Part shown: in pieces, positions 3,602-61,397 of the stretch
How positions within the stretch are numbered: position 1 is the first letter of the stretch
How the letters are laid out: the number at the start of each line of letters is the position of its first letter
Virus record (IMG/VR): IMGVR_UViG_3300023174_005338
Location: 1-64,000 of that record
Reading direction: 5' to 3' (one strand)
Length of the DNA: 64,000 bases
The notes under the pieces: generated by a model
Told to the model about the DNA's origin: nothing
Databases searched by the model: none
What the model saw: only the letters and a program-made list of their open reading frames with translations
Translations under genes and position numbers: made by a program

Positions 3602-4353
3602 AATTTGTACATCCTGGCGATAGCCATGCACATAGTCTACAAACTCTGAACCAACTATATGAGTATGATGATTTCATGGCCAGCATTCGCAGCATGGTAG
3701 ATCTTGGTTGCGGATCGGGTGAGGACTTGATCTGGTGGGCCACTAGAACTACTCGAGATGACAAGCCTGAGCCCTTACACATCAGATGCACAGGCATAGA
3801 TCTGCAACCAAAAATACAGTTAGGTGCGCAATATCCAAACATTGCGATTACACCTGGCGATTTCGAACAACCCATAACACCTCACCCAGGCGGATTTGAT
3901 GTGCTATGGTGTCACGACGCATTTCAATATGCTTTGAATCCTGTACAAACTCTCAGCAATTGGTGGCACATTGCCAGTCCGGGCGCCATGCTGGCACTTG
4001 CCGTACCAATCTCACAACGCATACATCATCGACAACTGGCTTATGAATTGCCCAGTGGTTGCTATTATCATCATACCATGGTCAGCCTGATGTACATGCT
4101 GGCCACCGCAGGTTGGGACTGCGGCTCAGGTTTTTTCAAACAAACTGTTGGTGAACCCTGGATACATGCCGTGGTCTATCGTAGCCAACATCCACCCATT
4201 GATCCTCGCCAGGCTACTTGGCACCACTTGGTTGAACTGAATCTTTTACCAGAATCTGCGGCTGCAAGCATATATGCCCACAGTGCCTTGCGCCAGCAGG
4301 ATTTGATTGTGCCTTGGATTGATCATAGTCTGGCCAGCATGGCCACTTTGTAA
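3598..4353 (+). CDS. Class I SAM-dependent methyltransferase
   Basis: VDLGCGSG motif I, GID, FDVLWCHD, PGAML. Confidence 0.85.
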   Translation: MKFVHPGDSHAHSLQTLNQLYEYDDFMASIRSMVDLGCGSGEDLIWWATRTTRDDKPEPLHIRCTGIDLQPKIQLGAQYPNIAITPGDFEQPITPHPGGFDVLWCHDAFQYALNPVQTLSNWWHIASPGAMLALAVPISQRIHHRQLAYELPSGCYYHHTMVSLMYMLATAGWDCGSGFFKQTVGEPWIHAVVYRSQHPPIDPRQATWHHLVELNLLPESAAASIYAHSALRQQDLIVPWIDHSLASMATL

Positions 4354-4390
4354 ATTAGATCAGACAATTTATGGGCCTATAAATATCCAC

Positions 4391-5149
4391 ATGAATACTA
4401 TTGTGGTTGTATCAGGTGGGTTTGATCCCATACACTCTGGACACATAAAACTAATCAAAGAAGCACGAACTCTAGGCGATTATCTAATTGTGGGCATCAA
4501 CAGTGACGAATGGTTGGCCCGCAAAAAAGGCCGTGCATTCATGCCCTGGCAAGAGCGCCTGTGTGTGCTAAACAACCTGTCCATGGTAGACGAGGTTTAC
4601 ACCTTTGACGACGACGACGGCACTGCTTGTCATCTTTTACAACAGGTCCGCGCACACTATCCTGATGCACGCATTGTATTTGCCAACGGTGGTGATCGTA
4701 CTGCAAAAAATATTCCAGAAATGACAGTGCCTGACATAGAATTTGTGTTTGGCGTGGGCGGGTCGGACAAGTCCAATTCCAGTTCGTGGATACTTGAAGA
4801 GTGGCGAGCACCTAGAACACATCGTGTCTGGGGGTCCTACCGTGTGTTGTATGAAGCAGGCGCCGGAGTCAAGGTCAAAGAACTCACGGTAGAGCCTGGC
4901 CAACGACTCAGCATGCAACGCCATAAGTCGCGTGCTGAGCATTGGTTTGTGACCGAAGGTCAGGCCACAGTTTACACTATCAACAGGAAAAGCGACGCTG
5001 AACTCATGGGAGAATTTACCAAACATCAACACATACACATTGATCGTGAAGAATGGCATCAACTGTGCAACGAAACTGATCAACCTCTGCGGGTGGTAGA
5101 GATACAATATGGCGTGAATTGTGTAGAAGAAGACATAGAACGACTATGA
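4391..5149 (+). CDS. Cytidylyltransferase-like (HIGH) domain fused to a cupin (type II mannose-6-phosphate isomerase-like) domain
   Basis: SGGFDPIHSGH, GINSD, FANGGDR; C-terminal WGSY, LSMQRH..RAEHW, EIQYG..EEDIER. Start placed at ATG 4391 after TAAATA. Confidence 0.85.
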   Translation: MNTIVVVSGGFDPIHSGHIKLIKEARTLGDYLIVGINSDEWLARKKGRAFMPWQERLCVLNNLSMVDEVYTFDDDDGTACHLLQQVRAHYPDARIVFANGGDRTAKNIPEMTVPDIEFVFGVGGSDKSNSSSWILEEWRAPRTHRVWGSYRVLYEAGAGVKVKELTVEPGQRLSMQRHKSRAEHWFVTEGQATVYTINRKSDAELMGEFTKHQHIHIDREEWHQLCNETDQPLRVVEIQYGVNCVEEDIERL

Positions 5150-5829
5150 CACCAATTCCAATTTTTATCGGCTACGATCCCAGAGAAGCCATAGCATATC
5201 ATGTGTGCGTAAACAGCATCATCCGACATGCCACACAACCAGTGGCCATTGTGCCCGTGGCACTAAATCTGTTCCAAGACTACGAAGAAACACACGGCGA
5301 CAACAGCAATCATTTTGTGTACACCAGATTCCTAGTTCCACATCTCATGGGTTATCAAGGATGGGCCATATTCATCGATGGTGACATGGTGCTTAGAGAT
5401 GACATTGTCAAACTATGGAGCCTGCGTGAATATGACAAAGACGTCATGGTAGTCAAGCACGATTATAAAACAAGGATGGCAGAGAAATACATGGGCGCCA
5501 AAAACGAAGATTATCCCAGAAAGAATTGGTCCAGTGTGATCTTATGGAACTGCTCTAGTTGGCCCAACAGAAAACTCACACCGGACTTCGTTCAAAGTCA
5601 ACCCGGCAGTTACCTACACAGATTTTCGTGGTTGGATGACGCTCGCATTGGCGAACTGCCCATGGAATGGAATTGGTTGCCAGACGAACTTGGAGCCAAC
5701 GCTGATGCAAAACTTTTACATTACACCTTGGGCACACCTTGCTTCACTGAGTTTGCTGATACACCACAAGGCGAAGAGTGGCACAGAGAACGCATACTCA
5801 CCGAATACTGCCAACAAAGGATCTTATGA
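5146..5829 (+). CDS. GT-A fold glycosyltransferase (GT8-like)
   Basis: IFIGYDPRE, FVYTRFLVP, DGD (DxD), RKNWSSV, WNWL, LHYTLGTP. Confidence 0.85.
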   Translation: MTPIPIFIGYDPREAIAYHVCVNSIIRHATQPVAIVPVALNLFQDYEETHGDNSNHFVYTRFLVPHLMGYQGWAIFIDGDMVLRDDIVKLWSLREYDKDVMVVKHDYKTRMAEKYMGAKNEDYPRKNWSSVILWNCSSWPNRKLTPDFVQSQPGSYLHRFSWLDDARIGELPMEWNWLPDELGANADAKLLHYTLGTPCFTEFADTPQGEEWHRERILTEYCQQRIL

Positions 5830-6878
5830 CCTTGCCCATAGCCGTGGTCGAACGATGGCCCATGGAAGAATACAAGGTGCTGTACCCAGATCAGTGCATT
5901 GCGCTCAAGCACAGCGTGGCAGACACCTTGAAATTATACAATGAACTCCAACTGTTGCGACAGTTATTCCGGTTCGAAGATGACAAAGAGAGCAAACGTC
6001 TAGATAAAAATCTTGAACTGCTGATCAGAGAAAAAGAAGAACGGTATTTTAGACTGACCAAGTTTAGTGACTATCCAGCCATGACCATGGCTGCTTTCCC
6101 ACAAAGCAGTTTCATGACCAGTCACGATTATAAACGTGCCAAAGATGCAATCACAGATCCGATCTTGGTGCGTGGTATCAGCGCAGGCGCATACATCAAA
6201 CATGCTGAACAAAATGGCCGCGATTACTACTTTATGGAAACTGGTTATTTAGGTAACTATCGCAGCGAAAACAACAGAACTGGTAGAAAAATATATCACA
6301 GGATTGAAAAAAATGCCATGCAACAGCGTAGGTTTTTGGATGTGCCCGATGATCGGTGGCAAGCACTCTGCAGATACAATCCCGCACTGAGCTATCAAGG
6401 CTGGCGCAAAGATCCTGGATCAAAAATCCTGTTGATCATGAGCACAGAAAAACCTTTTCAGTTCTATGGTGCAGATAGAGACACTTGGATCAAAAACACC
6501 ATTGATACTATAAAACAACACACAGATCGACCCATAGTAATCAAGGACAAGCCCGGACGTGCTGAAAGAAACACCACAGACAACATATATGATATTCTGG
6601 AACAAGACATATGGGCCGTGGTCACTTACAACAGCATAGCAGCCGTAGAAGCCGTGCAGGTTGGTATTCCCAGCTTCAGTCTGGCTCCCACTGCAGCCAG
6701 TCTTGTCACCACCGACGATCTCAGTCTTATTGCTTGCCCGCCTCGAACCGATGAACAGGTGATCTACAAATGGTTGTGCAGTTTGGCCTATGGTCAATTC
6801 AGCATAGACGAAATCATAACCGGCCAAGCCTGGAATCTGGTACAAGAAAATGAGCACCGAACGACCTTTGATTATTAA
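5826..6878 (+). CDS. Capsular polysaccharide KpsS/KpsC-like GT-B protein
   Basis: ETGY, RPIVIKDKP, VVTYNSIAAVEAVQVGIP, W..LAYGQFS..EI..G.AW; paralog of 6850 and 9285. Confidence 0.65.
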   Translation: MTLPIAVVERWPMEEYKVLYPDQCIALKHSVADTLKLYNELQLLRQLFRFEDDKESKRLDKNLELLIREKEERYFRLTKFSDYPAMTMAAFPQSSFMTSHDYKRAKDAITDPILVRGISAGAYIKHAEQNGRDYYFMETGYLGNYRSENNRTGRKIYHRIEKNAMQQRRFLDVPDDRWQALCRYNPALSYQGWRKDPGSKILLIMSTEKPFQFYGADRDTWIKNTIDTIKQHTDRPIVIKDKPGRAERNTTDNIYDILEQDIWAVVTYNSIAAVEAVQVGIPSFSLAPTAASLVTTDDLSLIACPPRTDEQVIYKWLCSLAYGQFSIDEIITGQAWNLVQENEHRTTFDY

Positions 6879-27716: not shown

Positions 27717-27758
27717 GTTGACTTTATTGATCATCGTGCTACAATAGTTAAATACATC

Positions 27759-28013
27759 ATGCAGGTCAGCAAAATCACAGAACTCACAGTGTTTGAAAGT
27801 CCCGACGGTGGACGCACGGTGTACGCTAGAAAACCCGGGGACTCCAAGCGAGAGTTGCATTGGCAAGATCCCAACCTGCAACAAGAGCTCAAAGAACTGG
27901 AACAACAAAAACGTTGGGTAGACATATTTTCAGCACGTCGAGACAATGTGGAACTGGATCGCCTGTGTGAACAGGTTGAAATTATCTATGAACTGGCCAG
28001 GAAGGACTCATGA
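27759..28013 (+). CDS. Hypothetical protein (ESPDGG.TVY family)
   Basis: 84 aa; TTGACT/TACAAT and TAAATA upstream. Confidence 0.7.
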   Translation: MQVSKITELTVFESPDGGRTVYARKPGDSKRELHWQDPNLQQELKELEQQKRWVDIFSARRDNVELDRLCEQVEIIYELARKDS

Positions 28014-55039: not shown

Positions 55040-55090
55040 AACCATCACTTAATAGCAGTATATTTCTAGTAAATACTACCAGGAGCTAGA

Positions 55091-55531
55091 ATGAAAAAAA
55101 TAATAATAAGTGTTCTGGCCAGCGTCGCTACATCCACGGTCAGCGCACAACTGGTACATCAGTTTAACTCGCCATCCTTTTCAGGATCGGGCTACAGCAG
55201 CCATGTCTTGACCATCGAGCAACTGGAAGCCACACGCCGTAAAGCCATAGCTGATGCACAAAAAGCCGCACAGGAAAAGGCCGAACGCGATGCCAAAAAT
55301 ACCAACTTGGCCAAGTTCTTGGTCAACGTGGAAAGTCGTATCTACGCACAACTTTCAAAACAGTTGGCAGATGCCATGTTTGCCGAAGGCGGTGCCAACT
55401 CTGGCAGTTTTGATTTCCAAGGCACCAACATCAGTTATGTGAAAACTGGCACAGATGTGACCTTGACCATCATTGAGGCCAACGGAAACAGGACCGAAAT
55501 CACTGTGCCCTTGTCGAGTTTTAGTTTCTGA
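55091..55531 (+). CDS. csgF: Curli assembly CsgF-like protein
   Basis: Signal peptide, LVHQFNSPSFSG (cf. F..PSFGG), RI..QLS, G..TEI.VP; directly upstream of csgG. Confidence 0.8.
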   Translation: MKKIIISVLASVATSTVSAQLVHQFNSPSFSGSGYSSHVLTIEQLEATRRKAIADAQKAAQEKAERDAKNTNLAKFLVNVESRIYAQLSKQLADAMFAEGGANSGSFDFQGTNISYVKTGTDVTLTIIEANGNRTEITVPLSSFSF

Positions 55532-56592
55532 TGCGTAGACTACTCCTAATCCTTCTTGTTGCTGTGTTGCCTGGCTGTGCTTACATACACATGGAAGTGG
55601 CACAGGAAGAGCCTGTGAAAGTCACGCCCAAACAAAATCTCATGGATCAGTTGCCGGTGTTGGATGGACCGCCCATGACCGTGGCTGTGTACGGATTCAG
55701 AGATCTCACTGGACAGAACAAACCCAATGACAGACTGGCCTTGTTCTCAAAGGCTGTGACACAAGGTGCTGAAGTGTTCTTGATCAAGAGCCTGCAAGAT
55801 TCCAAGAACTGGTTCCGTGTGGTAGAACGTGTGGGCCTGGACAACTTGATCAAAGAACGACAGCTGATCCGCAATCAGCGTGAAGTGTATGAAGGCAAGG
55901 AAGCCAAACCACTCAAGCCTTTGACTGTGGCTGGTATCTTGTTGGAAGGTGGTATTATTGGCTATGATTCAAACATCAGGTCAGGCGGTAATGGTGCCAG
56001 ATTCCTGGGCATAGGTGGTAGCCAGCAGTATCGTGTGGACGAAGTTACTGTAAGTCTTAGATTGATCTCAATCAGTTCAGGTGAGGTCCTGATGACCAAT
56101 GCTGTGACCAAGACCATATACTCAACAGCACACAATGTGGGCGTGTTGAGATTTGTGGATGCTGGAACCAAAGCCCTGGAGTTGGAGAATGGCCAAGCTC
56201 TGAACGAGCCCACTACCTATGCTGTGCGTGTGGCCATTGAACAGGCAGTGTATGAACTGATCACAGAAGGCCAGAAAAAAGGCCTATGGAGTTACAAGCG
56301 TGCTGAGGAGAAACAAAATGATGTCAAGCCTGCTGCAACAAATGCGCCGCCTGCAACAACAAGCGGCACAGAGACAAAAACAGAAACCGCAAAAACCGCC
56401 GCAGTCACAGTAATGCGGCTGCGCGAAGCATCATACATTTATCGCGATCCAGATGAACGCAGTCAACGCACCTGGATGCTGAAGGAAAACACAGATTTGA
56501 CTGTGACACCAGGCCAGAACGGCTGGGTTGCAGTGCAAGACTCAGCCGGTCGTCGGGGCTGGGTCAAAAGCGACAGGTTAATTCAGCCATGA
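55531..56592 (+). CDS. csgG: Curli secretion pore CsgG with C-terminal SH3b-like domain
   Basis: Lipobox LPGC; VAVYGFRDLTGQ.K, AVTQG, WFRVVER.GL.NL..ERQLIR, EGGIIGYD; tail GWV.V....GRRGWV. Confidence 0.92.
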   Translation: MRRLLLILLVAVLPGCAYIHMEVAQEEPVKVTPKQNLMDQLPVLDGPPMTVAVYGFRDLTGQNKPNDRLALFSKAVTQGAEVFLIKSLQDSKNWFRVVERVGLDNLIKERQLIRNQREVYEGKEAKPLKPLTVAGILLEGGIIGYDSNIRSGGNGARFLGIGGSQQYRVDEVTVSLRLISISSGEVLMTNAVTKTIYSTAHNVGVLRFVDAGTKALELENGQALNEPTTYAVRVAIEQAVYELITEGQKKGLWSYKRAEEKQNDVKPAATNAPPATTSGTETKTETAKTAAVTVMRLREASYIYRDPDERSQRTWMLKENTDLTVTPGQNGWVAVQDSAGRRGWVKSDRLIQP

Positions 56593-56698
56593 ATGCCTGT
56601 AAATATGTAAATGCGGCAATCGCATATTATAATAATAAGGTCGCAAAGACCAAGGAGCTGGTTGGAGAATAATAAAAACAAATCCAACCTGAAACAAG

Positions 56699-57325
56699 AT
56701 GGAAAAGAGAACGACAGGCATTGGCGGATTGTCGAGAAAATTATCCGCAATTCTGATGACAGCTGCGATGTGGTCATTGGGTGCTCAGGCTAACGAAGTT
56801 TATATTGAACAGGTAGGTAGCGGTTCGACCATAAACATCACGCAACAGGGCACAGACAATCGTATCGGTGACAGCACCACTCCGGCCTACATAGGATCGG
56901 GATCAAACACAGTGACCATAGATCAGATTGGTTCGACCAACACTCTGGACATGGTGGTCAACGGTGCCGGCACAGATGTGATAGTTACAACCACCGGTGA
57001 CAACAACACTCAAACTATCAACTGTGGAACCACAACATCAGCTGGCTGTAGCGGCAGTTATATCAAACAACAAGTCACTGGAGATTCGAACACTGTGACT
57101 CAGAATCTGGGGTCGGGTGCCAATCATACCAGTGAAATCAATGTGACCGGTGATAGTAACACAGTGACTCACACCAGCACAGCCACAGGTACCACTTCGG
57201 CCAATATTACTGTGACGGGCAATACCAACACAGTGGGCGTTACTCAATCAGGAATGTTGAACAAGAGTGTCACAGTTACCAGCACTGGCAATAGCAATAA
57301 CATTAGCATTACTCAGTCTGACTAG
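56699..57325 (+). CDS. Curlin-like repeat protein (CsgA/CsgB-like)
   Basis: Signal peptide ending AQA; repeated I.Q.G..N and TG.SN.V beta-arc units. Confidence 0.75.
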   Translation: MEKRTTGIGGLSRKLSAILMTAAMWSLGAQANEVYIEQVGSGSTINITQQGTDNRIGDSTTPAYIGSGSNTVTIDQIGSTNTLDMVVNGAGTDVIVTTTGDNNTQTINCGTTTSAGCSGSYIKQQVTGDSNTVTQNLGSGANHTSEINVTGDSNTVTHTSTATGTTSANITVTGNTNTVGVTQSGMLNKSVTVTSTGNSNNISITQSD

Positions 57326-58346
57326 TTGGGCCTCAGTGGGTCGCGTGGTTGAACAGACCGGCCCCACTGAAATAGTGCGCAACAAAAAGAGTCTGAGCAG
57401 TAGTGTGAATACTCCTGTGGAGATGCTGGACACCATTGTCACAGCTCGAGCCAAGGCCAAGCTGGAGTTTGTGGACAAGACCACGGTCAACATCACTGAA
57501 CAAAGCAAGATACTCATAGACGATTTCGTGTATGATCCCAAAGCCGGATCAGGCAAGCTGGCCATGAAGATGGTACAAGGCACTGCCAGATATGCGTCAG
57601 GTCAGATAGCCAAGAACTCACCACAGAATGTAAACATAACCACACCCACTGCTGCTGTGGCCGTGCGTGGCACAGACTTTTCCATGACCGTGGATGAACT
57701 GGGTCGTAGCCTTATCATGTTGTTGCCCAGTTGCGATGCTAAAAGTTGTGTGACTGGATCAATCAGTGTCAGCAACGATGCTGGTCTAGTCATTTTAGAT
57801 GTGGCCTATCAAGTCACGGTGGTGGCCAGCTTGTCAGCACCGCCCACAGCACCCACGGTGATACAGATTGATGCCAACAACATCAACAACATGTTGATCG
57901 TGGCACCCCCACCAGCAGTGCGTGAAGCCCTACAACATATACAACAAACAGCCTTGGACATTAATTTTTTAAACAAGGATCTGCTGAAGTTTGATGAACT
58001 GGATGTGAACTATCTTGAAAAGTTCAAAAGATTGGATGTGAACTTTTTGGATTTGGATTTCTTGGTCAATTTGTTGGATCTCAGCAACAAGCAGTTGAGT
58101 GCCAGCCTAGATGCCATGAGTCGTGAAGCCAGCCTGTTACCGGCCTATGATCCTAACTCTGGACTAAGGTATTTTTTCAACGAAGATGAAAGCAAGGTCA
58201 CTGTGAGACTAAACACAGGGCACATGGCCGAAGTCACTGTGGGCGTAGAACATGATGCTGTGGTGACTATAAATCAAGCAGGATGGGCAGTTACACAACA
58301 GATCAACCGTGGCGGAACCAGTATAATTAATATTATACAACGATAA
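57267..58346 (+). CDS. FecR-domain periplasmic protein
   Basis: Signal peptide; D.I.T, F.D.T.V.I.EQS...ID.FVYDP, G..RY.SG, TPTA...VRGTDF. Confidence 0.88.
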   Translation: MSQLPALAIAITLALLSLTSWASVGRVVEQTGPTEIVRNKKSLSSSVNTPVEMLDTIVTARAKAKLEFVDKTTVNITEQSKILIDDFVYDPKAGSGKLAMKMVQGTARYASGQIAKNSPQNVNITTPTAAVAVRGTDFSMTVDELGRSLIMLLPSCDAKSCVTGSISVSNDAGLVILDVAYQVTVVASLSAPPTAPTVIQIDANNINNMLIVAPPPAVREALQHIQQTALDINFLNKDLLKFDELDVNYLEKFKRLDVNFLDLDFLVNLLDLSNKQLSASLDAMSREASLLPAYDPNSGLRYFFNEDESKVTVRLNTGHMAEVTVGVEHDAVVTINQAGWAVTQQINRGGTSIINIIQR

Positions 58347-58356
58347 GGAGATAATA

Positions 58357-58521
58357 ATGGAAGGAACCACAATCAAGACTCTGGCTGAATATATTGCCAA
58401 ATTGAATCGTGACAATGCTGAATTCTTGAAAGAATACGAAAACGATCAATTTGATACCAATGGCGTTGAACAAGATCACATAGAAACATTCTGGCCACCC
58501 AATGAGCACCCCCGCACCTAA
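58357..58521 (+). CDS. Small acidic protein (54 aa, not in track)
   Basis: AAGGAG SD; MEGTTIKTLAEYIAKL... Confidence 0.55.
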   Translation: MEGTTIKTLAEYIAKLNRDNAEFLKEYENDQFDTNGVEQDHIETFWPPNEHPRT

Positions 58522-58666
58522 TTCTCCAGCACCTTGGTGTTGTTGGCCTGGTTGCACTCGACCTGCACAGATCTACGAAAATAGAAATATCAAAGGAGTA
58601 ACATCATATCTTAAAACCTGTGGCAAACACTGGTTACCAGGTGTTCACTCCAGAGCTAATCCATAA
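58502..58666 (+). CDS. Small Cys/His (zinc-binding-like) protein (54 aa, not in track)
   Basis: CCWPGC...TCGKH. Confidence 0.45.
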   Translation: MSTPAPNSPAPWCCWPGCTRPAQIYENRNIKGVTSYLKTCGKHWLPGVHSRANP

Positions 58667-58704
58667 TGTGCGTGTTGATCTTATCCAAGCTCAACCAGTA
58701 AATA

Positions 58705-58776
58705 CTGTGTCGATATAAAAACTATAAGGAATCGACCCAGCTACATATTCAAAAGCCCCCGCGAGGGGCTTTTTTT
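58705..58776 (+). ncRNA. Candidate small RNA
   Basis: TAAATA at 58699-58704, GTCGAT/ATCGAC hairpin with A-rich AAGGA loop, then terminator; no ORF. Confidence 0.45.
58751..58776 (+). terminator. Rho-independent terminator
   Basis: AAAAGCCCC-CGCGA-GGGGCTTTT plus T-run. Confidence 0.85.
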
Positions 58777-58794
58777 ATCTAAGTTAAATATAAC

Positions 58795-60810
58795 ATGCTG
58801 AAAAAAATCCTAACTAGCCCCTGGACTGCTCTAATAACATTGGCAGTTATAGTAGCAATACGCATAGCGGATCCTGCATTTGTAGAAAGTGTTCGCTTGC
58901 GTTATTTTGATACCTTGGTGACCAGCAAGCCCGCAGAAGTCACAGGTGTTCATGTTGTAAATATTGATGAAAAGGCTTTAGAACGATATGGTCAGTTTCC
59001 CTTCGCCAGAAATGTATATGCTGGCATCATCCAAGATCTTTATCGCCGCAACGCTGGTCTTGTTGTTTTTAATATTCTTACTCCTGATCGCGATCGCATG
59101 GGTCGCGATGCGGCGTATGTGGCGGCGTTGCAAAAACATGCTACGGTTCTTCCAAGCATAGGCAGCACAGCGACTCGTAACCAACCTAGGAATCCCGGAA
59201 GTGCGGTGATCGGTCCCCTGGATACTAACAATTTTGTGACCTATCCTGGAATCATTGCCAACATACCTGCTGTGGAACGTGCGGCCATAGGCGTAGGTAT
59301 CACTAACACCTTGCCCGAGATAGATGGTGTGGTACGTAGAATGCCCATGGTAGTGGCTGTTGATGGTAAGTTATATCCCAGTCTGGCCATGGAAGTCATG
59401 CGTGTGGCCGCAGGTGACTCGACTTTCCAAGTCAAAGTAAATGAACAGGGCGTGGAAAAAATGCGTATTCCACAGTTTGGCCCAGTGAGTACAGATAGCC
59501 TCAGCAGGATCTGGATTGACTGGAGCCTGACTCCAGAACGTCACGGCTTAACCGACTTGCCCCAGGACTTTGATGGCGAGATAGTTATTGTGGGAGTCAG
59601 TGCCGCAGGCCTGTCCAATCCTGTGGCCACCAGCCTGGGTGAGATGTTGCCACAAGACTTGCAAGCCGCTGTGATATCAACAGTGATAGCCAACAAGATC
59701 AGACCAGCTATTACTCGTCCTGACTGGGCAGATGGTGCAGAGATAATCACCTTGGTCGTGCTTGCGGTGACATTGATATTTTTAGGGAGATGGACCTATG
59801 TTGGTATTGCTGGCAGTGTTGTTGTCATTGGTATTTGTGTTTGGGTTCCTGGTGCTTTGTACTCGAGCCATGCTTGGCTCACTGACGTCACTTTGGTTGT
59901 TGGGGGTCTTGTTGCTGTGCTTCTGCATGCTTATGGAGTACGGTTTGTATCAGAGTATCTTGCTAAACAACAAATAAAGAAACAGTTTGGCACCTACTTG
60001 AGTCCGGCCATGGTCGAGAAACTTCAGAAGAATCCAGAACTGCTGAAGTTGGGCGGTGAAAGCAGAGAGTTGAGTATCATGTTCACTGATGTGCGTGGCT
60101 TTACTACCATCAGCGAACACTACGGTGCCGACGTTCAAGGACTGACCAAGATCATGAACAGATATATGACAGCCATGACCGCCAAAATCATAGAGAACGA
60201 AGGTACCTTGGACAAGTACATAGGTGATGCACAGATGGCATTTTGGAATGCACCCTTGGATGACGCTGATCATGCTGTCAATGCTGTGCGTACTGCTTTA
60301 CAAATGATGGAGAGTTTGGATGAGTTCAATCGTGAAATCAGTGCAGAAGGCATTCCGCCTTTTGGCATGGGCCTTGGCATCAATACTGGTACCGTGGTCG
60401 TTGGTAATATGGGCAGCGATCAGCGTTTTGATTACACCTGCCTTGGTGACAGCGTTAATCTGGCGAGCCGACTCGAAGGCCAGTCAAAACCTTATGGCGT
60501 TCGCATCATACTGGGACCGCGTACTAGTGAGCTTGTCAGAGATTCCTACCCAGTTGCGGAACTAGACTGCATAGCAGTAAAAGGCAAGACCGAAGGCGTC
60601 CGCATATATACACTGGCAGAAGAAACACAGTTGCACAAAGATTTTATCACCTTGTATTACGCTGGCGAATGGAAACAAGCACAGGCCTTGATTCCAGGAT
60701 GCATCAAAGCCTGCCCAGAACTGGAGGCATATTATGGGGCCATGGATGAACGACTTGCGGCAGGTAAGCCAGATGACTGGATGGGAACCTATAAGGCTAC
60801 ATCTAAATGA
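58795..60810 (+). CDS. CHASE2-domain class III adenylyl cyclase
   Basis: N-terminal TM; CHASE2 (VVNIDE..L..YGQFP..R, DGVVRR.P); three TMs; FTDVRGFT, DKYIGD, GINTG, DYT.LGD.VNLASRLE. Confidence 0.93.
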   Translation: MLKKILTSPWTALITLAVIVAIRIADPAFVESVRLRYFDTLVTSKPAEVTGVHVVNIDEKALERYGQFPFARNVYAGIIQDLYRRNAGLVVFNILTPDRDRMGRDAAYVAALQKHATVLPSIGSTATRNQPRNPGSAVIGPLDTNNFVTYPGIIANIPAVERAAIGVGITNTLPEIDGVVRRMPMVVAVDGKLYPSLAMEVMRVAAGDSTFQVKVNEQGVEKMRIPQFGPVSTDSLSRIWIDWSLTPERHGLTDLPQDFDGEIVIVGVSAAGLSNPVATSLGEMLPQDLQAAVISTVIANKIRPAITRPDWADGAEIITLVVLAVTLIFLGRWTYVGIAGSVVVIGICVWVPGALYSSHAWLTDVTLVVGGLVAVLLHAYGVRFVSEYLAKQQIKKQFGTYLSPAMVEKLQKNPELLKLGGESRELSIMFTDVRGFTTISEHYGADVQGLTKIMNRYMTAMTAKIIENEGTLDKYIGDAQMAFWNAPLDDADHAVNAVRTALQMMESLDEFNREISAEGIPPFGMGLGINTGTVVVGNMGSDQRFDYTCLGDSVNLASRLEGQSKPYGVRIILGPRTSELVRDSYPVAELDCIAVKGKTEGVRIYTLAEETQLHKDFITLYYAGEWKQAQALIPGCIKACPELEAYYGAMDERLAAGKPDDWMGTYKATSK

Positions 60811-60959
60811 TTATGTCAATTGGTGGGTGGACTGTGCCACCTGGACTTATTTAAACTTGTGGTTCTTGCCACATCGCATGCCAGGGTTGCATTCGGACGT
60901 GGATAAATTTGTAAGCCAATTTACTCTAAATGGAATCAAGGCCTCAAATATCTGCCGAC

Positions 60960-61397
60960 CTAGTTGACAGGTATTCTCAGTCTAAAGCCAATGGCACTGG
61001 CACCTGTGCTGTCAACCCTAGGCAAAATCAAGGTACAGGCCCACTTATAACAGGCTTCAGGAAAGGCCATGGGCAACACTGCGGCACGTTGGTATCCAGT
61101 GACGGCACCCACAGCAATGCCAATATCCCAACCATCCTTTTTATAAACCGCATAACGACCATAGGCATAGGTGCTGCCACTGTATTCTGAATTGCGGTAC
61201 CAGCCTCCGGCTACAGATATCCTGTCGGTGATACCTTGCTCTAGTCCAGCACCCCAGTTGAAACCATTGTATCCAGACCGGTCATGGACACTGATGCCAT
61301 TGACCTGTACATAGGTTTGAGCCGACAAACTATTTGCAACGACAAAAAACAACACACCCAAACAGTATTTTGAATTGTATAGAATTTTTTTTATCAT
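60960..61397 (-). CDS. PagP-like outer-membrane beta-barrel
   Basis: Signal peptide; S.H.R..YN..NWG.G, Y.NS, G.VTGY, P. Confidence 0.55.
   Translation of the reverse strand: MIKKILYNSKYCLGVLFFVVANSLSAQTYVQVNGISVHDRSGYNGFNWGAGLEQGITDRISVAGGWYRNSEYSGSTYAYGRYAVYKKDGWDIGIAVGAVTGYQRAAVLPMAFPEACYKWACTLILPRVDSTGASAIGFRLRIPVN

What the first reader, a model, noticed from the sequence alone, without database searches (positions are those of the whole stretch)
58699..58776. Candidate ~70-nt late small RNA embedded in the signalling locus
It has its own TAAATA motif, immediately followed by a GTCGAT/ATCGAC stem with the loop ATAAAAACTATAAGGA and then a strong terminator; there is no ORF. The cyclase has a separate TAAATA after the terminator, so this unit appears self-contained. 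A loop-exposed ANGGA is the CsrA/RsmA recognition motif and A-rich loops bind Hfq, so it may act as a sponge.
Basis: partly seen in the sequence, partly recalled or inferred. Interest (0 to 1): 0.6.

Follow-up and report, generated by a model that had tools for sequence, protein, structure and literature searches.

The report
Conserved small RNA candidate in phage
A 337-kb freshwater T4-like phage carries, just upstream of its cyclase gene, a roughly 68-base non-coding unit (late-promoter motif, hairpin, terminator) that 14 other related phage sequences also keep, with compensating base changes, so it is a credible new phage small RNA, though no RNA data exist and the proposed CsrA-sponge role does not hold up.

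Summary
TAAATA is at 58699-58704. The GTCGAT/ATCGAC stem is at 58709-14 and 58731-36, with a 16-nt A-rich loop. A strong intrinsic terminator lies at 58751-58776. There is no ORF, and a second TAAATA sits 4 nt before the cyclase ATG.

The window is the first 64 kb of a 337-kb freshwater T4-like phage that has a gp55 homologue. Genome-wide, TAAATA is the most enriched hexamer upstream of genes (11.7-fold). It precedes portal, sheath and baseplate genes, so it is the late-promoter motif.

The unit is single-copy here, and 14 other distinct phage sequences carry it. TAAATA is invariant. Hairpin 1 starts at the 5th base after it and covaries (4 of 6 pairs changed on both sides, 94% paired). Every copy has a terminator. 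All 14 copies folded give 65-74 nt two-hairpin RNAs.

In some relatives the unit lies between convergent genes or up to 1.1 kb from the cyclase, so it is not a cyclase leader. The loop GGA is missing in 6 of the 14 aligned copies, so CsrA titration is not a conserved property. The A-rich loop with 3-nt periodicity and the U-tail fit Hfq binding, which is untested.

No RNA-seq run holds this DNA, so expression is inferred.

The parts
58667..58698 (+). Semi-conserved upstream block (TGTGCGTG...ATCTTAT type box), held at a fixed 23-24 nt from TAAATA in all homologues. Role unexplained.
   Evidence: Alignment A1 and upstream sequences. No such box lies upstream of the other TAAATA sites of the genome.
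58699..58704 (+). P1: TAAATA, the core of a T4-type late-promoter motif. Invariant in all 15 copies of the unit.
   Evidence: Genome-wide enrichment upstream of ORFs. Precedes portal, sheath, baseplate and adaptor genes. gp55 homologue in the genome.
58709..58736 (+). Hairpin 1: a 6-bp stem (58709-14 / 58731-36) closing a 16-nt A-rich loop (58715-30). Its first G is the 5th base after TAAATA, which is the inferred transcription start.
   Evidence: Fold. Covariation: 4 of 6 pairs changed on both sides, 94% of cells paired, slid controls 23-47%. The A58731G variant, common in lake metagenomes, keeps a U-G pair.
58737..58750 (+). Single-stranded A/U-rich linker between the two hairpins.
   Evidence: Unpaired in the MFE folds of 12 of the 14 homologues; it is partly paired in L117 and L146. 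Partly conserved (...ATTYAA before the terminator).
58751..58776 (+). Intrinsic terminator: GCCCC/GGGGC stem extended by A-U pairs, 5-nt loop, T7 run.
   Evidence: Present in every homologue with a different sequence but kept pairing (6 of 8 pairs changed on both sides).
58785..58790 (+). P2: second TAAATA, 4 nt before the cyclase ATG (58795). This is the cyclase's own late promoter, of the leaderless type.
   Evidence: TAAATA-N4-start is the sharpest spacing peak in the genome (9 ORFs). Conserved in relatives with and without the unit.
58795..60810 (+). CHASE2 adenylate/guanylate cyclase gene. A neighbour, not part of the RNA.
   Evidence: Pfam CHASE2 1.5e-35 and Guanylate_cyc 2.1e-21.

Best explanation
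The interval 58699-58776 is an independent, conserved small-RNA gene of a freshwater T4-like jumbo phage.

Inferred mechanism:
1. Late in infection the phage's gp55-type holoenzyme recognises TAAATA (P1).
2. Transcription starts about 5-6 nt downstream, at G58709 or U58710, which is the first base of hairpin 1.
3. Transcription stops at the intrinsic terminator around 58773-58777. The product is a 65-70 nt RNA made of a 5'-terminal hairpin with a 16-nt A-rich apical loop, a 14-nt A/U-rich single-stranded linker, a terminator hairpin and a U-tail.
4. The base-paired 5' end and the terminator should make the RNA stable.

The conserved surface is the loop. It has invariant A at every third position, in an AAN-AAN-YAY-AAN pattern. 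Together with the U-tail, this most resembles the Hfq distal-face plus proximal-face contacts of class II enterobacterial sRNAs. The likeliest action is therefore in trans, as a chaperone-bound regulator or competitor in the infected cell. It does not control the cyclase in cis.

Shown here: the sequence anatomy, conservation, covariation, single-copy status and independence from the cyclase.
Inferred: promoter use, the 5' end, timing, and any protein partner or target.
For: Late-promoter system:
- TAAATA is the most enriched hexamer upstream of ORFs in the genome.
- It precedes portal, tail sheath, baseplate wedge and adaptor genes.
- A gp55 homologue is present (E = 2e-7).

The unit is rare and single-copy:
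- Only 2 of 164 TAAATA sites are followed within 130 nt by a terminator.
- The covariance model finds one copy in 337 kb.

Conservation:
- 14 other distinct copies occur in metagenomic phage contigs whose cyclase is about 58-92% identical.
- TAAATA is invariant while its flanks vary.

Structure:
- Helix 1 has 4 of 6 pairs changed on both sides.
- Over the whole structure, 92.9% of cells are paired against 73.9% in shuffles (0 of 500 shuffles reach the observed value) and 23-47% in slid controls. RNAalifold on plain MAFFT alignments predicts the same structure.
- U-G pairs on the + strand (8 of 14 at the loop-closing pair, plus internal ones in L009 and L105) would be A-C mismatches on the other strand, so the fold belongs to the + strand RNA.

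Selection:
- The segment from TAAATA to the end of hairpin 1 is 0.55-0.92 identical to the window. Four-fold degenerate sites of the adjacent cyclase are only 0.37-0.50 identical in 10 of 12 comparisons (0.65 and 0.81 in the two closest relatives).
- All 14 aligned copies are predicted to give 65-74 nt RNAs. The same two-hairpin fold appears in all but the most divergent copy, L146, where the terminator is not recovered.

Independence from the cyclase:
- In L105 and L107 the unit sits between convergent genes, about 1.1 kb from the cyclase. It is 745 nt away in L113 and about 250 nt away in L118 and L146.
- Wherever a co-directional gene follows, that gene has its own TAAATA after the terminator.
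- In lake-metagenome contigs, two joints have homology to the window resuming at 58698 and 58699, the start of TAAATA.
Against: - There is no transcript evidence. No public RNA run holds this DNA, and only DNA contigs could be laid on it.
- The start site is inferred. In T4 the box spans -13 to -6 (PMC2988020), which puts +1 at the 6th base after the motif. The N4-ATG peak in this genome suggests the 5th base.
- The covariance-model alignment is fitted to the structure, the sequences are related, and there are only 15 of them.
- The unit is dispensable. A relative with 87% cyclase identity (L003, a 236-kb contig, 68% complete) and a 328-kb relative lack it.
- A conserved block upstream of TAAATA (58667-58698) is unexplained. 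It could mean that the functional RNA begins further upstream.
- No target was found in the phage genome.
- The host, and whether it has Hfq, is unknown.
Confidence: 0.58

Rival explanations
1. The hairpin and terminator are the 3' untranslated end of the upstream curli/FecR/small-ORF operon. They would act as a stabilising or processing structure plus terminator. TAAATA would be conserved for another reason, for example as an A/U-rich RNase E site. Any short RNA would then be a processing product.
For: - The unit always follows the FecR-(small ORF or curlin-like) block in the same orientation, so upstream transcripts must run through it to the same terminator.
- About 30 nt upstream of TAAATA are also conserved, at fixed spacing, and other TAAATA sites show nothing similar.
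- 3'-UTR-derived sRNAs are well known (established knowledge).
Against: - TAAATA is invariant in 15 of 15 copies while neighbouring bases vary, and it is this genome's late-promoter motif.
- Helix 1 begins at the position where the genome's spacing data place the start.
- The upstream gene differs between relatives (Zn-finger-like ORF2, ORF1, or a curlin-like gene) while the unit stays the same.
- This rival differs mainly in how the RNA is made. The same RNA species would result.
Confidence: 0.2
2. The unit is a cis-acting leader of the cyclase. P1 transcripts would stop at the terminator unless an antiterminator or a signal lets them read into the cyclase, as with lambda pR'-tR' (6S RNA) or Stx-phage StxS, or as in an attenuator or riboswitch.
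For: - In 9 of the 15 distinct copies (8 listed, plus L186) the unit lies immediately upstream of the cyclase.
- A late promoter followed closely by a terminator is the pR'-tR' layout. StxS shows that such a by-product can act as an sRNA (PMC7547250).
Against: - The cyclase keeps its own TAAATA-N4-ATG after the terminator, as do relatives without the unit.
- In L105 and L107 the terminator faces a convergent gene. In L113, L118 and L146 other genes intervene.
- No conserved alternative (antiterminator) pairing exists. The GGGTC/GACCC repeat occurs in only one subgroup (sequences).
- There is no Rfam riboswitch or leader above threshold.
Confidence: 0.07
3. The unit is a relic or a recombination cassette. 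It could be an orphaned late promoter, leader and Shine-Dalgarno (AAGGA) of a lost gene. Or it could be a PeSL-like promoter/stem-loop module that serves gene shuffling rather than making a functional RNA.
For: - TAAATA followed about 21 nt later by AAGGA looks like the genome's usual late leader of 17-24 nt with GGA/GGAG.
- The site is a hot spot of gene-content change. Melnitz and HTVC008M carry a 338-441 aa gene here, and metagenome contigs show joints at 58351>58699, 58596>58698 and 58499>58795.
- PeSLs are composite promoter plus stem-loop cassettes in T4-type phages (PMC2839356).
Against: - Compensatory changes in helix 1, and slower evolution than synonymous sites, indicate selection on structure.
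- The AAGGA is replaced in 6 of 14 copies, and no copy has a start codon after it.
- The unit is single-copy per genome. It has no sigma-70 -35/-10 and no downstream SD and ATG before the terminator, unlike PeSLs.
Confidence: 0.08
4. The unit is a CsrA/RsmA sponge: the loop-exposed ANGGA titrates the host's CsrA.
For: - AAGGA lies in the loop in the window and 7 relatives.
- Four of these (L103, L123, L105, L107) also have a second GGA in the linker.
Against: - The window has one GGA. Six of the 14 aligned copies have none in the loop.
- Known sponges carry many GGA loops (established knowledge).
- The phage encodes no CsrA, and the host is unknown.
Confidence: 0.03

Closest known systems
Hfq-dependent bacterial sRNAs, especially class II (ChiX/MgrR type), and 3'-UTR sRNAs with an internal promoter (DapZ/MicL type)
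   Same: - Size of about 70 nt, an intrinsic terminator with a U-tail of at least 6, and an A/U-rich stretch before the terminator.
- An A-rich single-stranded segment with triplet periodicity, like ARN motifs.
- A position at the 3' end of an operon, with its own promoter.
   Different: - It is phage-encoded and driven by a T4-type late motif.
- The A-rich segment is presented in a hairpin loop.
- No Hfq binding, target or host is known.
- There is no sequence or Rfam match.
Lambda 6S RNA / StxS (late-promoter-proximal terminated transcript; PMC7547250)
   Same: A short RNA defined by a phage late promoter and a nearby intrinsic terminator, upstream of late-expressed accessory genes.
   Different: - The phage is a lytic T4-type phage with a gp55-type promoter, and no Q/qut system is evident.
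- The downstream gene has its own promoter.
- The unit also occurs between convergent genes, so read-through is not its purpose.
CsrB/CsrC/RsmY/RsmZ CsrA sponges
   Same: A GGA in a hairpin loop in the window and its nearest relatives.
   Different: One GGA (at most two) instead of many, and not conserved across the family.
PeSL promoter/stem-loop cassettes of T4-type phages (PMC2839356, PMC4122927)
   Same: A composite promoter plus stem-loop/terminator intergenic module in a T4-type phage, at a site of insertion and deletion between relatives.
   Different: - Single-copy and orthologous rather than a dispersed repeat.
- A late TAAATA rather than a sigma-70 -35/-10.
- The promoter lies upstream of the terminator, with no gene between them.

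Membership tests
T4-type late transcription unit | A -10-like TATAAATA-type box with no -35 element, used in front of virion genes | tested here: met
   The 6-nt core TAAATA is the top upstream hexamer. No upstream conservation is seen at generic sites. It precedes portal, sheath, baseplate and adaptor genes. Only the 6-nt core is present at P1, not the full 8-mer.
T4-type late transcription unit | Phage-encoded gp55 late sigma factor | tested here: met
   T4 gp55 matches G000:272100-272414, E = 2.2e-7, 31% identity over residues 11-116.
T4-type late transcription unit | Mapped RNA 5' end about 6 nt downstream of the box, appearing late in infection | not testable with these tools
   No RNA run holds the DNA. 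The start is inferred from the TAAATA-N4-ATG peak and the T4 box position (PMC2988020).
CsrA-sequestering sRNA (CsrB/RsmZ type) | Multiple GGA motifs, mostly in hairpin loops | tested here: not met
   There is one GGA in the window's unit. The loop GGA is absent in 6 of 14 aligned copies, and at most two GGA occur, in four relatives.
CsrA-sequestering sRNA (CsrB/RsmZ type) | CsrA present in the infected cell and bound by the RNA | not testable with these tools
   The host is unknown. The phage itself encodes no CsrA.
Hfq-dependent sRNA | Rho-independent terminator with a 3' U-tail of at least 6 | tested here: met
   T7 run at 58770-58776. T-runs of at least 6 in all 14 aligned copies.
Hfq-dependent sRNA | Single-stranded ARN/AAN repeats (distal face) or a U-rich site next to the terminator | tested here: inconclusive
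   The loop has invariant A at positions 7, 10, 13 and 16, with AAN triplets interrupted by a YAY triplet. The linker ends in ATTYAA. This is a resemblance only.
Hfq-dependent sRNA | Binding to Hfq and Hfq-dependent stability or regulation | not testable with these tools
   The phage has no Hfq gene, and the host is unknown.
Late-promoter-proximal terminated transcript with antitermination (lambda 6S / StxS) | Downstream late genes depend on read-through of the terminator | tested here: not met
   The cyclase has its own TAAATA-N4-ATG. The unit lies between convergent genes in L105 and L107.
PeSL regulatory cassette | Many dispersed near-identical copies with a sigma-70-like promoter, ending in the SD and ATG of the next gene | tested here: not met
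   One copy in 337 kb. There is no strong sigma-70-like site on the + strand at 58600-58700, and no start codon before the terminator.
Any Rfam 15 family (riboswitch, leader, sRNA) | Score at or above the family's gathering threshold | tested here: not met
   No hit in the window at gathering thresholds. The best sub-threshold hit is 22 bits against a 55-bit cut-off, driven by the terminator.

The most novel reading that the evidence does not exclude
This is the founding member of an undescribed family of late-expressed sRNAs in freshwater T4-like jumbo phages. The family would be inherited together with the phage's curli/FecR/CHASE2-cyclase signalling module. Its 5' hairpin would present an AAN-periodic loop that captures a host RNA chaperone (Hfq-like) or a host mRNA. 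The phage would thereby couple post-transcriptional takeover to its cyclic-nucleotide and surface-fibre programme late in infection.
Probability: 0.18. Interest if true: 0.7.

Novelty: new member of a known kind. Interest (0 to 1): 0.5.

Why it matters
Very few regulatory RNAs are known from lytic T4-type phages, and none from the pelagimyophage-like phages of abundant freshwater and marine bacteria. An earlier study could not even predict their middle and late promoters (PMC7029224).

This locus provides three things:
1. A working late-promoter motif for such a genome, TAAATA, with two characteristic spacings to the start codon.
2. A compact, comparatively validated RNA candidate with defined ends that can be probed directly.
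3. A covariance model that already recovers 15 distinct copies.

If the RNA is expressed, it would be a tractable example of a virulent environmental phage using an sRNA alongside a cyclic-nucleotide/curli module.

Tried and rejected
- Nucleotide similarity to GenBank phages gave no match, in near mode for 57000-61000 and in distant mode for 58300-58900.
- An exact 16-mer search in IMG/VR (TAAATA plus 10 nt) gave 19 hits. Only L009 is homologous. The others, including the look-alike promoter-leader in L084, are chance matches.
- Rfam found nothing at gathering or permissive thresholds. There are no tRNA or tmRNA genes.
- Micro-ORF idea: the frame after TAAATA is open in several copies. It has no start codon, one copy begins with TAG, and 2-nt loop indels shift the frame. 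Rejected.
- Antiterminator or riboswitch idea: repeated GGGTC/GACCC arms that could swap partners occur in only one subgroup. Rejected as a general mechanism.
- Search for targets in the phage genome by complementarity: 3 perfect 11-mers and scattered 9-10-mers, no more than chance, none at conserved start regions. A TTRTAGTT scan was also uninformative.
- The phage encodes no CsrA or Hfq.
- Other copies elsewhere in the genome: only weak promoter/terminator-like hits at E = 0.03 and 0.65. Inspection showed ordinary terminators.
- Search for the unit elsewhere in relatives that lack it next to the cyclase: none in L003's 236-kb contig or L014's 328-kb contig. Three other contigs were not held.
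- RNA evidence: no RNA run was listed. Laying four DNA runs gave variants and joints only.
- The upstream box as a CRP-like site: only a TGTG-type half-site is conserved. Left unexplained.

Full report
**The observation.**
- TAAATA lies at 58699-58704.
- The stem GTCGAT/ATCGAC lies at 58709-14 and 58731-36, around a 16-nt A-rich loop that contains AAGGA.
- A/U-rich single-stranded linker at 58737-58750.
- The terminator has a GCCCC/GGGGC stem extended by A-U pairs and a T7 run at 58770-58776.
- A second TAAATA at 58785-58790 sits 4 nt before the ATG of a 671-aa CHASE2 adenylate/guanylate cyclase.

No start-codon ORF lies in 58667-58794. The MFE fold gives exactly the two hairpins (-22.2 kcal/mol, z = -3.65). 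Most of that energy comes from the terminator, and a 6-bp stem alone would not be remarkable.

**Context.**
The window is bases 1-64000 of a 337,119-bp virus record with direct terminal repeats, from a freshwater lake metagenome. It is a T4-type phage. It encodes a UvsW-like helicase, a gp41-type helicase, RNR, ligase and ClpX, portal, sheath and baseplate wedge proteins, and a gp55 homologue.

Its cyclase is 37% identical to those of Methylophilales phage Melnitz and Pelagibacter phage HTVC008M. In those phages the same CsgF-CsgG-curlin-FecR-x-cyclase order is found (the curli cluster is described in PMC7029224). Where they carry a 338-441 aa gene between FecR and the cyclase, this phage has three things instead:
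- ORF1 at 58357-58521.
- ORF2, Cys-rich, at 58502-58666.
- The non-coding unit.

**Is TAAATA a promoter motif here?**
Overall counts match base composition (28 on the + strand against about 30 expected). The placement, however, is far from random. TAAATA is the most enriched hexamer within 80 nt upstream of ORFs in the whole genome (76 of 355 ORFs, 11.7-fold).

The distance from the motif to the start codon is bimodal:
- A sharp peak at 4 nt (9 ORFs, including the cyclase), which suggests leaderless late mRNAs.
- A broad peak at 17-24 nt with GGA/GGAG.

Genes behind the motif include portal, tail sheath, baseplate wedge, head-tail adaptor and other virion proteins. Generic sites show no upstream conservation, as in T4, where the late promoter is only a -10-like box (PMC7892883, PMC2988020).

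In T4 the 8-bp box spans -13 to -6 (PMC2988020), so +1 would be the 6th base after it. The N4-ATG peak here argues for the 5th base. Either way the start falls on G58709 or U58710, the first bases of hairpin 1. This is an inference, not a mapped end.

**Relatives.**
Cyclase-guided retrieval from IMG/VR and JGI metagenomes, followed by a covariance model built from eight copies, found 15 distinct copies in all. They are the window, L103, L161, L123, L009, L105, L107, L109, L112, L113, L117, L118, L044, L146 and L186. All come from phages whose cyclase is about 58-92% identical.

The unit is single-copy in this genome. It is absent from many relatives, including L003 (87% cyclase identity). It is therefore an accessory element.

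**What is conserved.**
- TAAATA is invariant, while the four bases after it and the bases before it vary.
- A G-C pair opens helix 1 at the 5th base after the motif in all 14 aligned copies.
- Helix 1 changes from GTCGAT/ATCGAC to GTCAGT/GCTGAC, GTCAGC/GCTGAC and GCNGGC/GCCNNC types. Four of its 6 pairs are changed on both sides, and 94% of cells are paired.
- For the whole structure, 92.9% of cells pair, against 73.9% in shuffles (0 of 500 reach it) and 23-47% when partners are slid by 1-3 columns.
- RNAalifold on plain MAFFT alignments predicts the same helices, so the result does not depend only on the model-fitted alignment.
- Frequent U-G pairs would be A-C mismatches on the opposite strand, which points to a + strand RNA.
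- The A58731G variant, which dominates in one lake metagenome, turns the closing U-A into U-G.
- The terminator differs in sequence everywhere but keeps its pairing and a T-run.
- Predicted RNAs are 65-74 nt. The same two-hairpin fold is recovered in all but the most divergent copy, L146.
- Identity of the promoter-hairpin segment to the window is 0.55-0.92. Four-fold degenerate sites in the neighbouring cyclase are only 0.37-0.50 identical in 10 of 12 comparisons. The segment is therefore under purifying selection.

**The loop.**
It is 16-18 nt, almost free of G, with invariant A at positions 1, 6?/7, 10, 12?/13 and 16. In practice this is an AAN-AAN-YAY-AAN pattern with 3-nt periodicity.

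The others read AACAA, AACGA or AACCA. A CsrA-binding GGA is therefore not a conserved feature, and the AAGGA is not a relic Shine-Dalgarno either. No copy has a start codon behind it, and 2-nt indels in the loop break any reading frame.

The A-periodic loop, the A/U-rich linker and the U-tail resemble the distal-face plus proximal-face Hfq contacts of class II sRNAs. That is a resemblance drawn from established knowledge and was not tested. The phage encodes neither Hfq nor CsrA, and the host is unknown.

**Independence from the cyclase.**
- In 9 of the 15 distinct copies (8, plus L186) the unit directly precedes the cyclase, which then always has its own TAAATA-N4-ATG.
- In L118 and L146 a small co-directional gene with its own TAAATA and SD intervenes.
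- In L113 the gap is 745 nt.
- In L105 and L107 the unit lies between convergent genes, about 1.1 kb from the cyclase, and the reverse gene ends inside it.

A promoter conserved where only about 70 nt can be transcribed from it argues for a self-contained RNA gene. It argues against a leader or attenuator of the lambda pR'-tR'/StxS kind (PMC7547250).

Only one other TAAATA in 337 kb is followed by a terminator within 130 nt, so this layout is not a by-product of genome compaction. It is also not a PeSL cassette (PMC2839356). It is single-copy, it lacks a sigma-70 promoter, and it has no downstream SD and ATG before the terminator. The site is nevertheless a hot spot of gene-content change, with joints 58351>58699, 58596>58698 and 58499>58795 in lake contigs.

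**Remaining doubts.**
- No RNA data exist, so expression, timing and ends are inferred.
- A block of about 30 nt upstream of TAAATA (58667-58698) is conserved at fixed spacing, and other TAAATA sites show nothing similar. It could be a regulator site for P1, or a sign that the functional RNA is cut from the operon's 3' UTR. The same short RNA could arise by either route.
- No target could be found in the phage genome.

**Verdict.**
The interpretation as a self-contained late small RNA is supported by comparative evidence (confidence about 0.6). The CsrA-sponge mechanism is not supported. An Hfq-type interaction remains possible but untested. This is a new member of a known kind (phage-encoded sRNA) and has no counterpart in Rfam.

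Noticed in passing
window 27749-27761 and 58785-58797; also G000 98592, 148340, 155921, 159535(-), 320610, 324440: TAAATA lies exactly 4 nt before the start codon of 9 ORFs, with 5-7 nt for 9 more. This suggests that many late mRNAs of this phage are leaderless or nearly so. A second class has 17-24 nt leaders with GGA/GGAG.
   Followed up: partly
window 58357-58521 and 58502-58666: Two overlapping 54-aa ORFs replace the second curlin-repeat gene of Melnitz and HTVC008M. ORF1 ends in a conserved ETFWPP motif. ORF2 is Cys-rich (CC..C...C..H, zinc-finger-like). Relatives have them singly, in the other order, or fused (L110, L123, L007). Neither matches a Pfam family.
   Followed up: partly
window 58667-58698: A semi-conserved box (TGTGCGTG / GTGTATACGCA types, followed by a T-rich stretch) lies at a fixed 23-24 nt upstream of P1 in all copies of the unit. 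It is absent from other TAAATA sites. Its function is unexplained.
   Followed up: partly
window 55091-58346: A curli-type module (CsgF, CsgG with a C-terminal SH3, a curlin-repeat protein, and a FecR-domain protein) has its own TAAATA sites at 55070 and 56600. The whole curli/FecR/cyclase locus therefore looks late-expressed.
   Followed up: partly
window 57200-60200 (lake metagenome contigs): There is high microdiversity, with hundreds of related contigs in one lake run. The joints 58351>58699, 58596>58698 and 58499>58795 show that strains differ by presence or absence of ORF1, ORF2 and the RNA unit.
   Followed up: partly
G000:C1:336893-336953 (outside the window): This is the only other TAAATA followed by a terminator-like hairpin within 130 nt. 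It lies just after a virion structural gene near the right genome end, and it contains GTGTATAC/GTGTATGCGC, which resembles the upstream box of the unit.
   Followed up: no
L003 7297-10011 versus 4001-6013: In this close relative the CsgG-curlin-FecR-ORF1 block lies downstream of the cyclase and is inverted. ORF1 is followed by TAAATA, an SD and a membrane-protein gene instead of the RNA unit.
   Followed up: partly
G000:C1:272100-272414 (outside the window): A gp55 (late sigma) homologue lies inside a roughly 300-aa ORF that itself has a TAAATA 19 nt upstream.
   Followed up: partly
whole record G000: At 337 kb with terminal repeats, this phage is more than twice the size of the cultured relatives Melnitz (141 kb) and HTVC008M (147 kb) that share the curli/cyclase module. 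Several related contigs are 236-357 kb.
   Followed up: no
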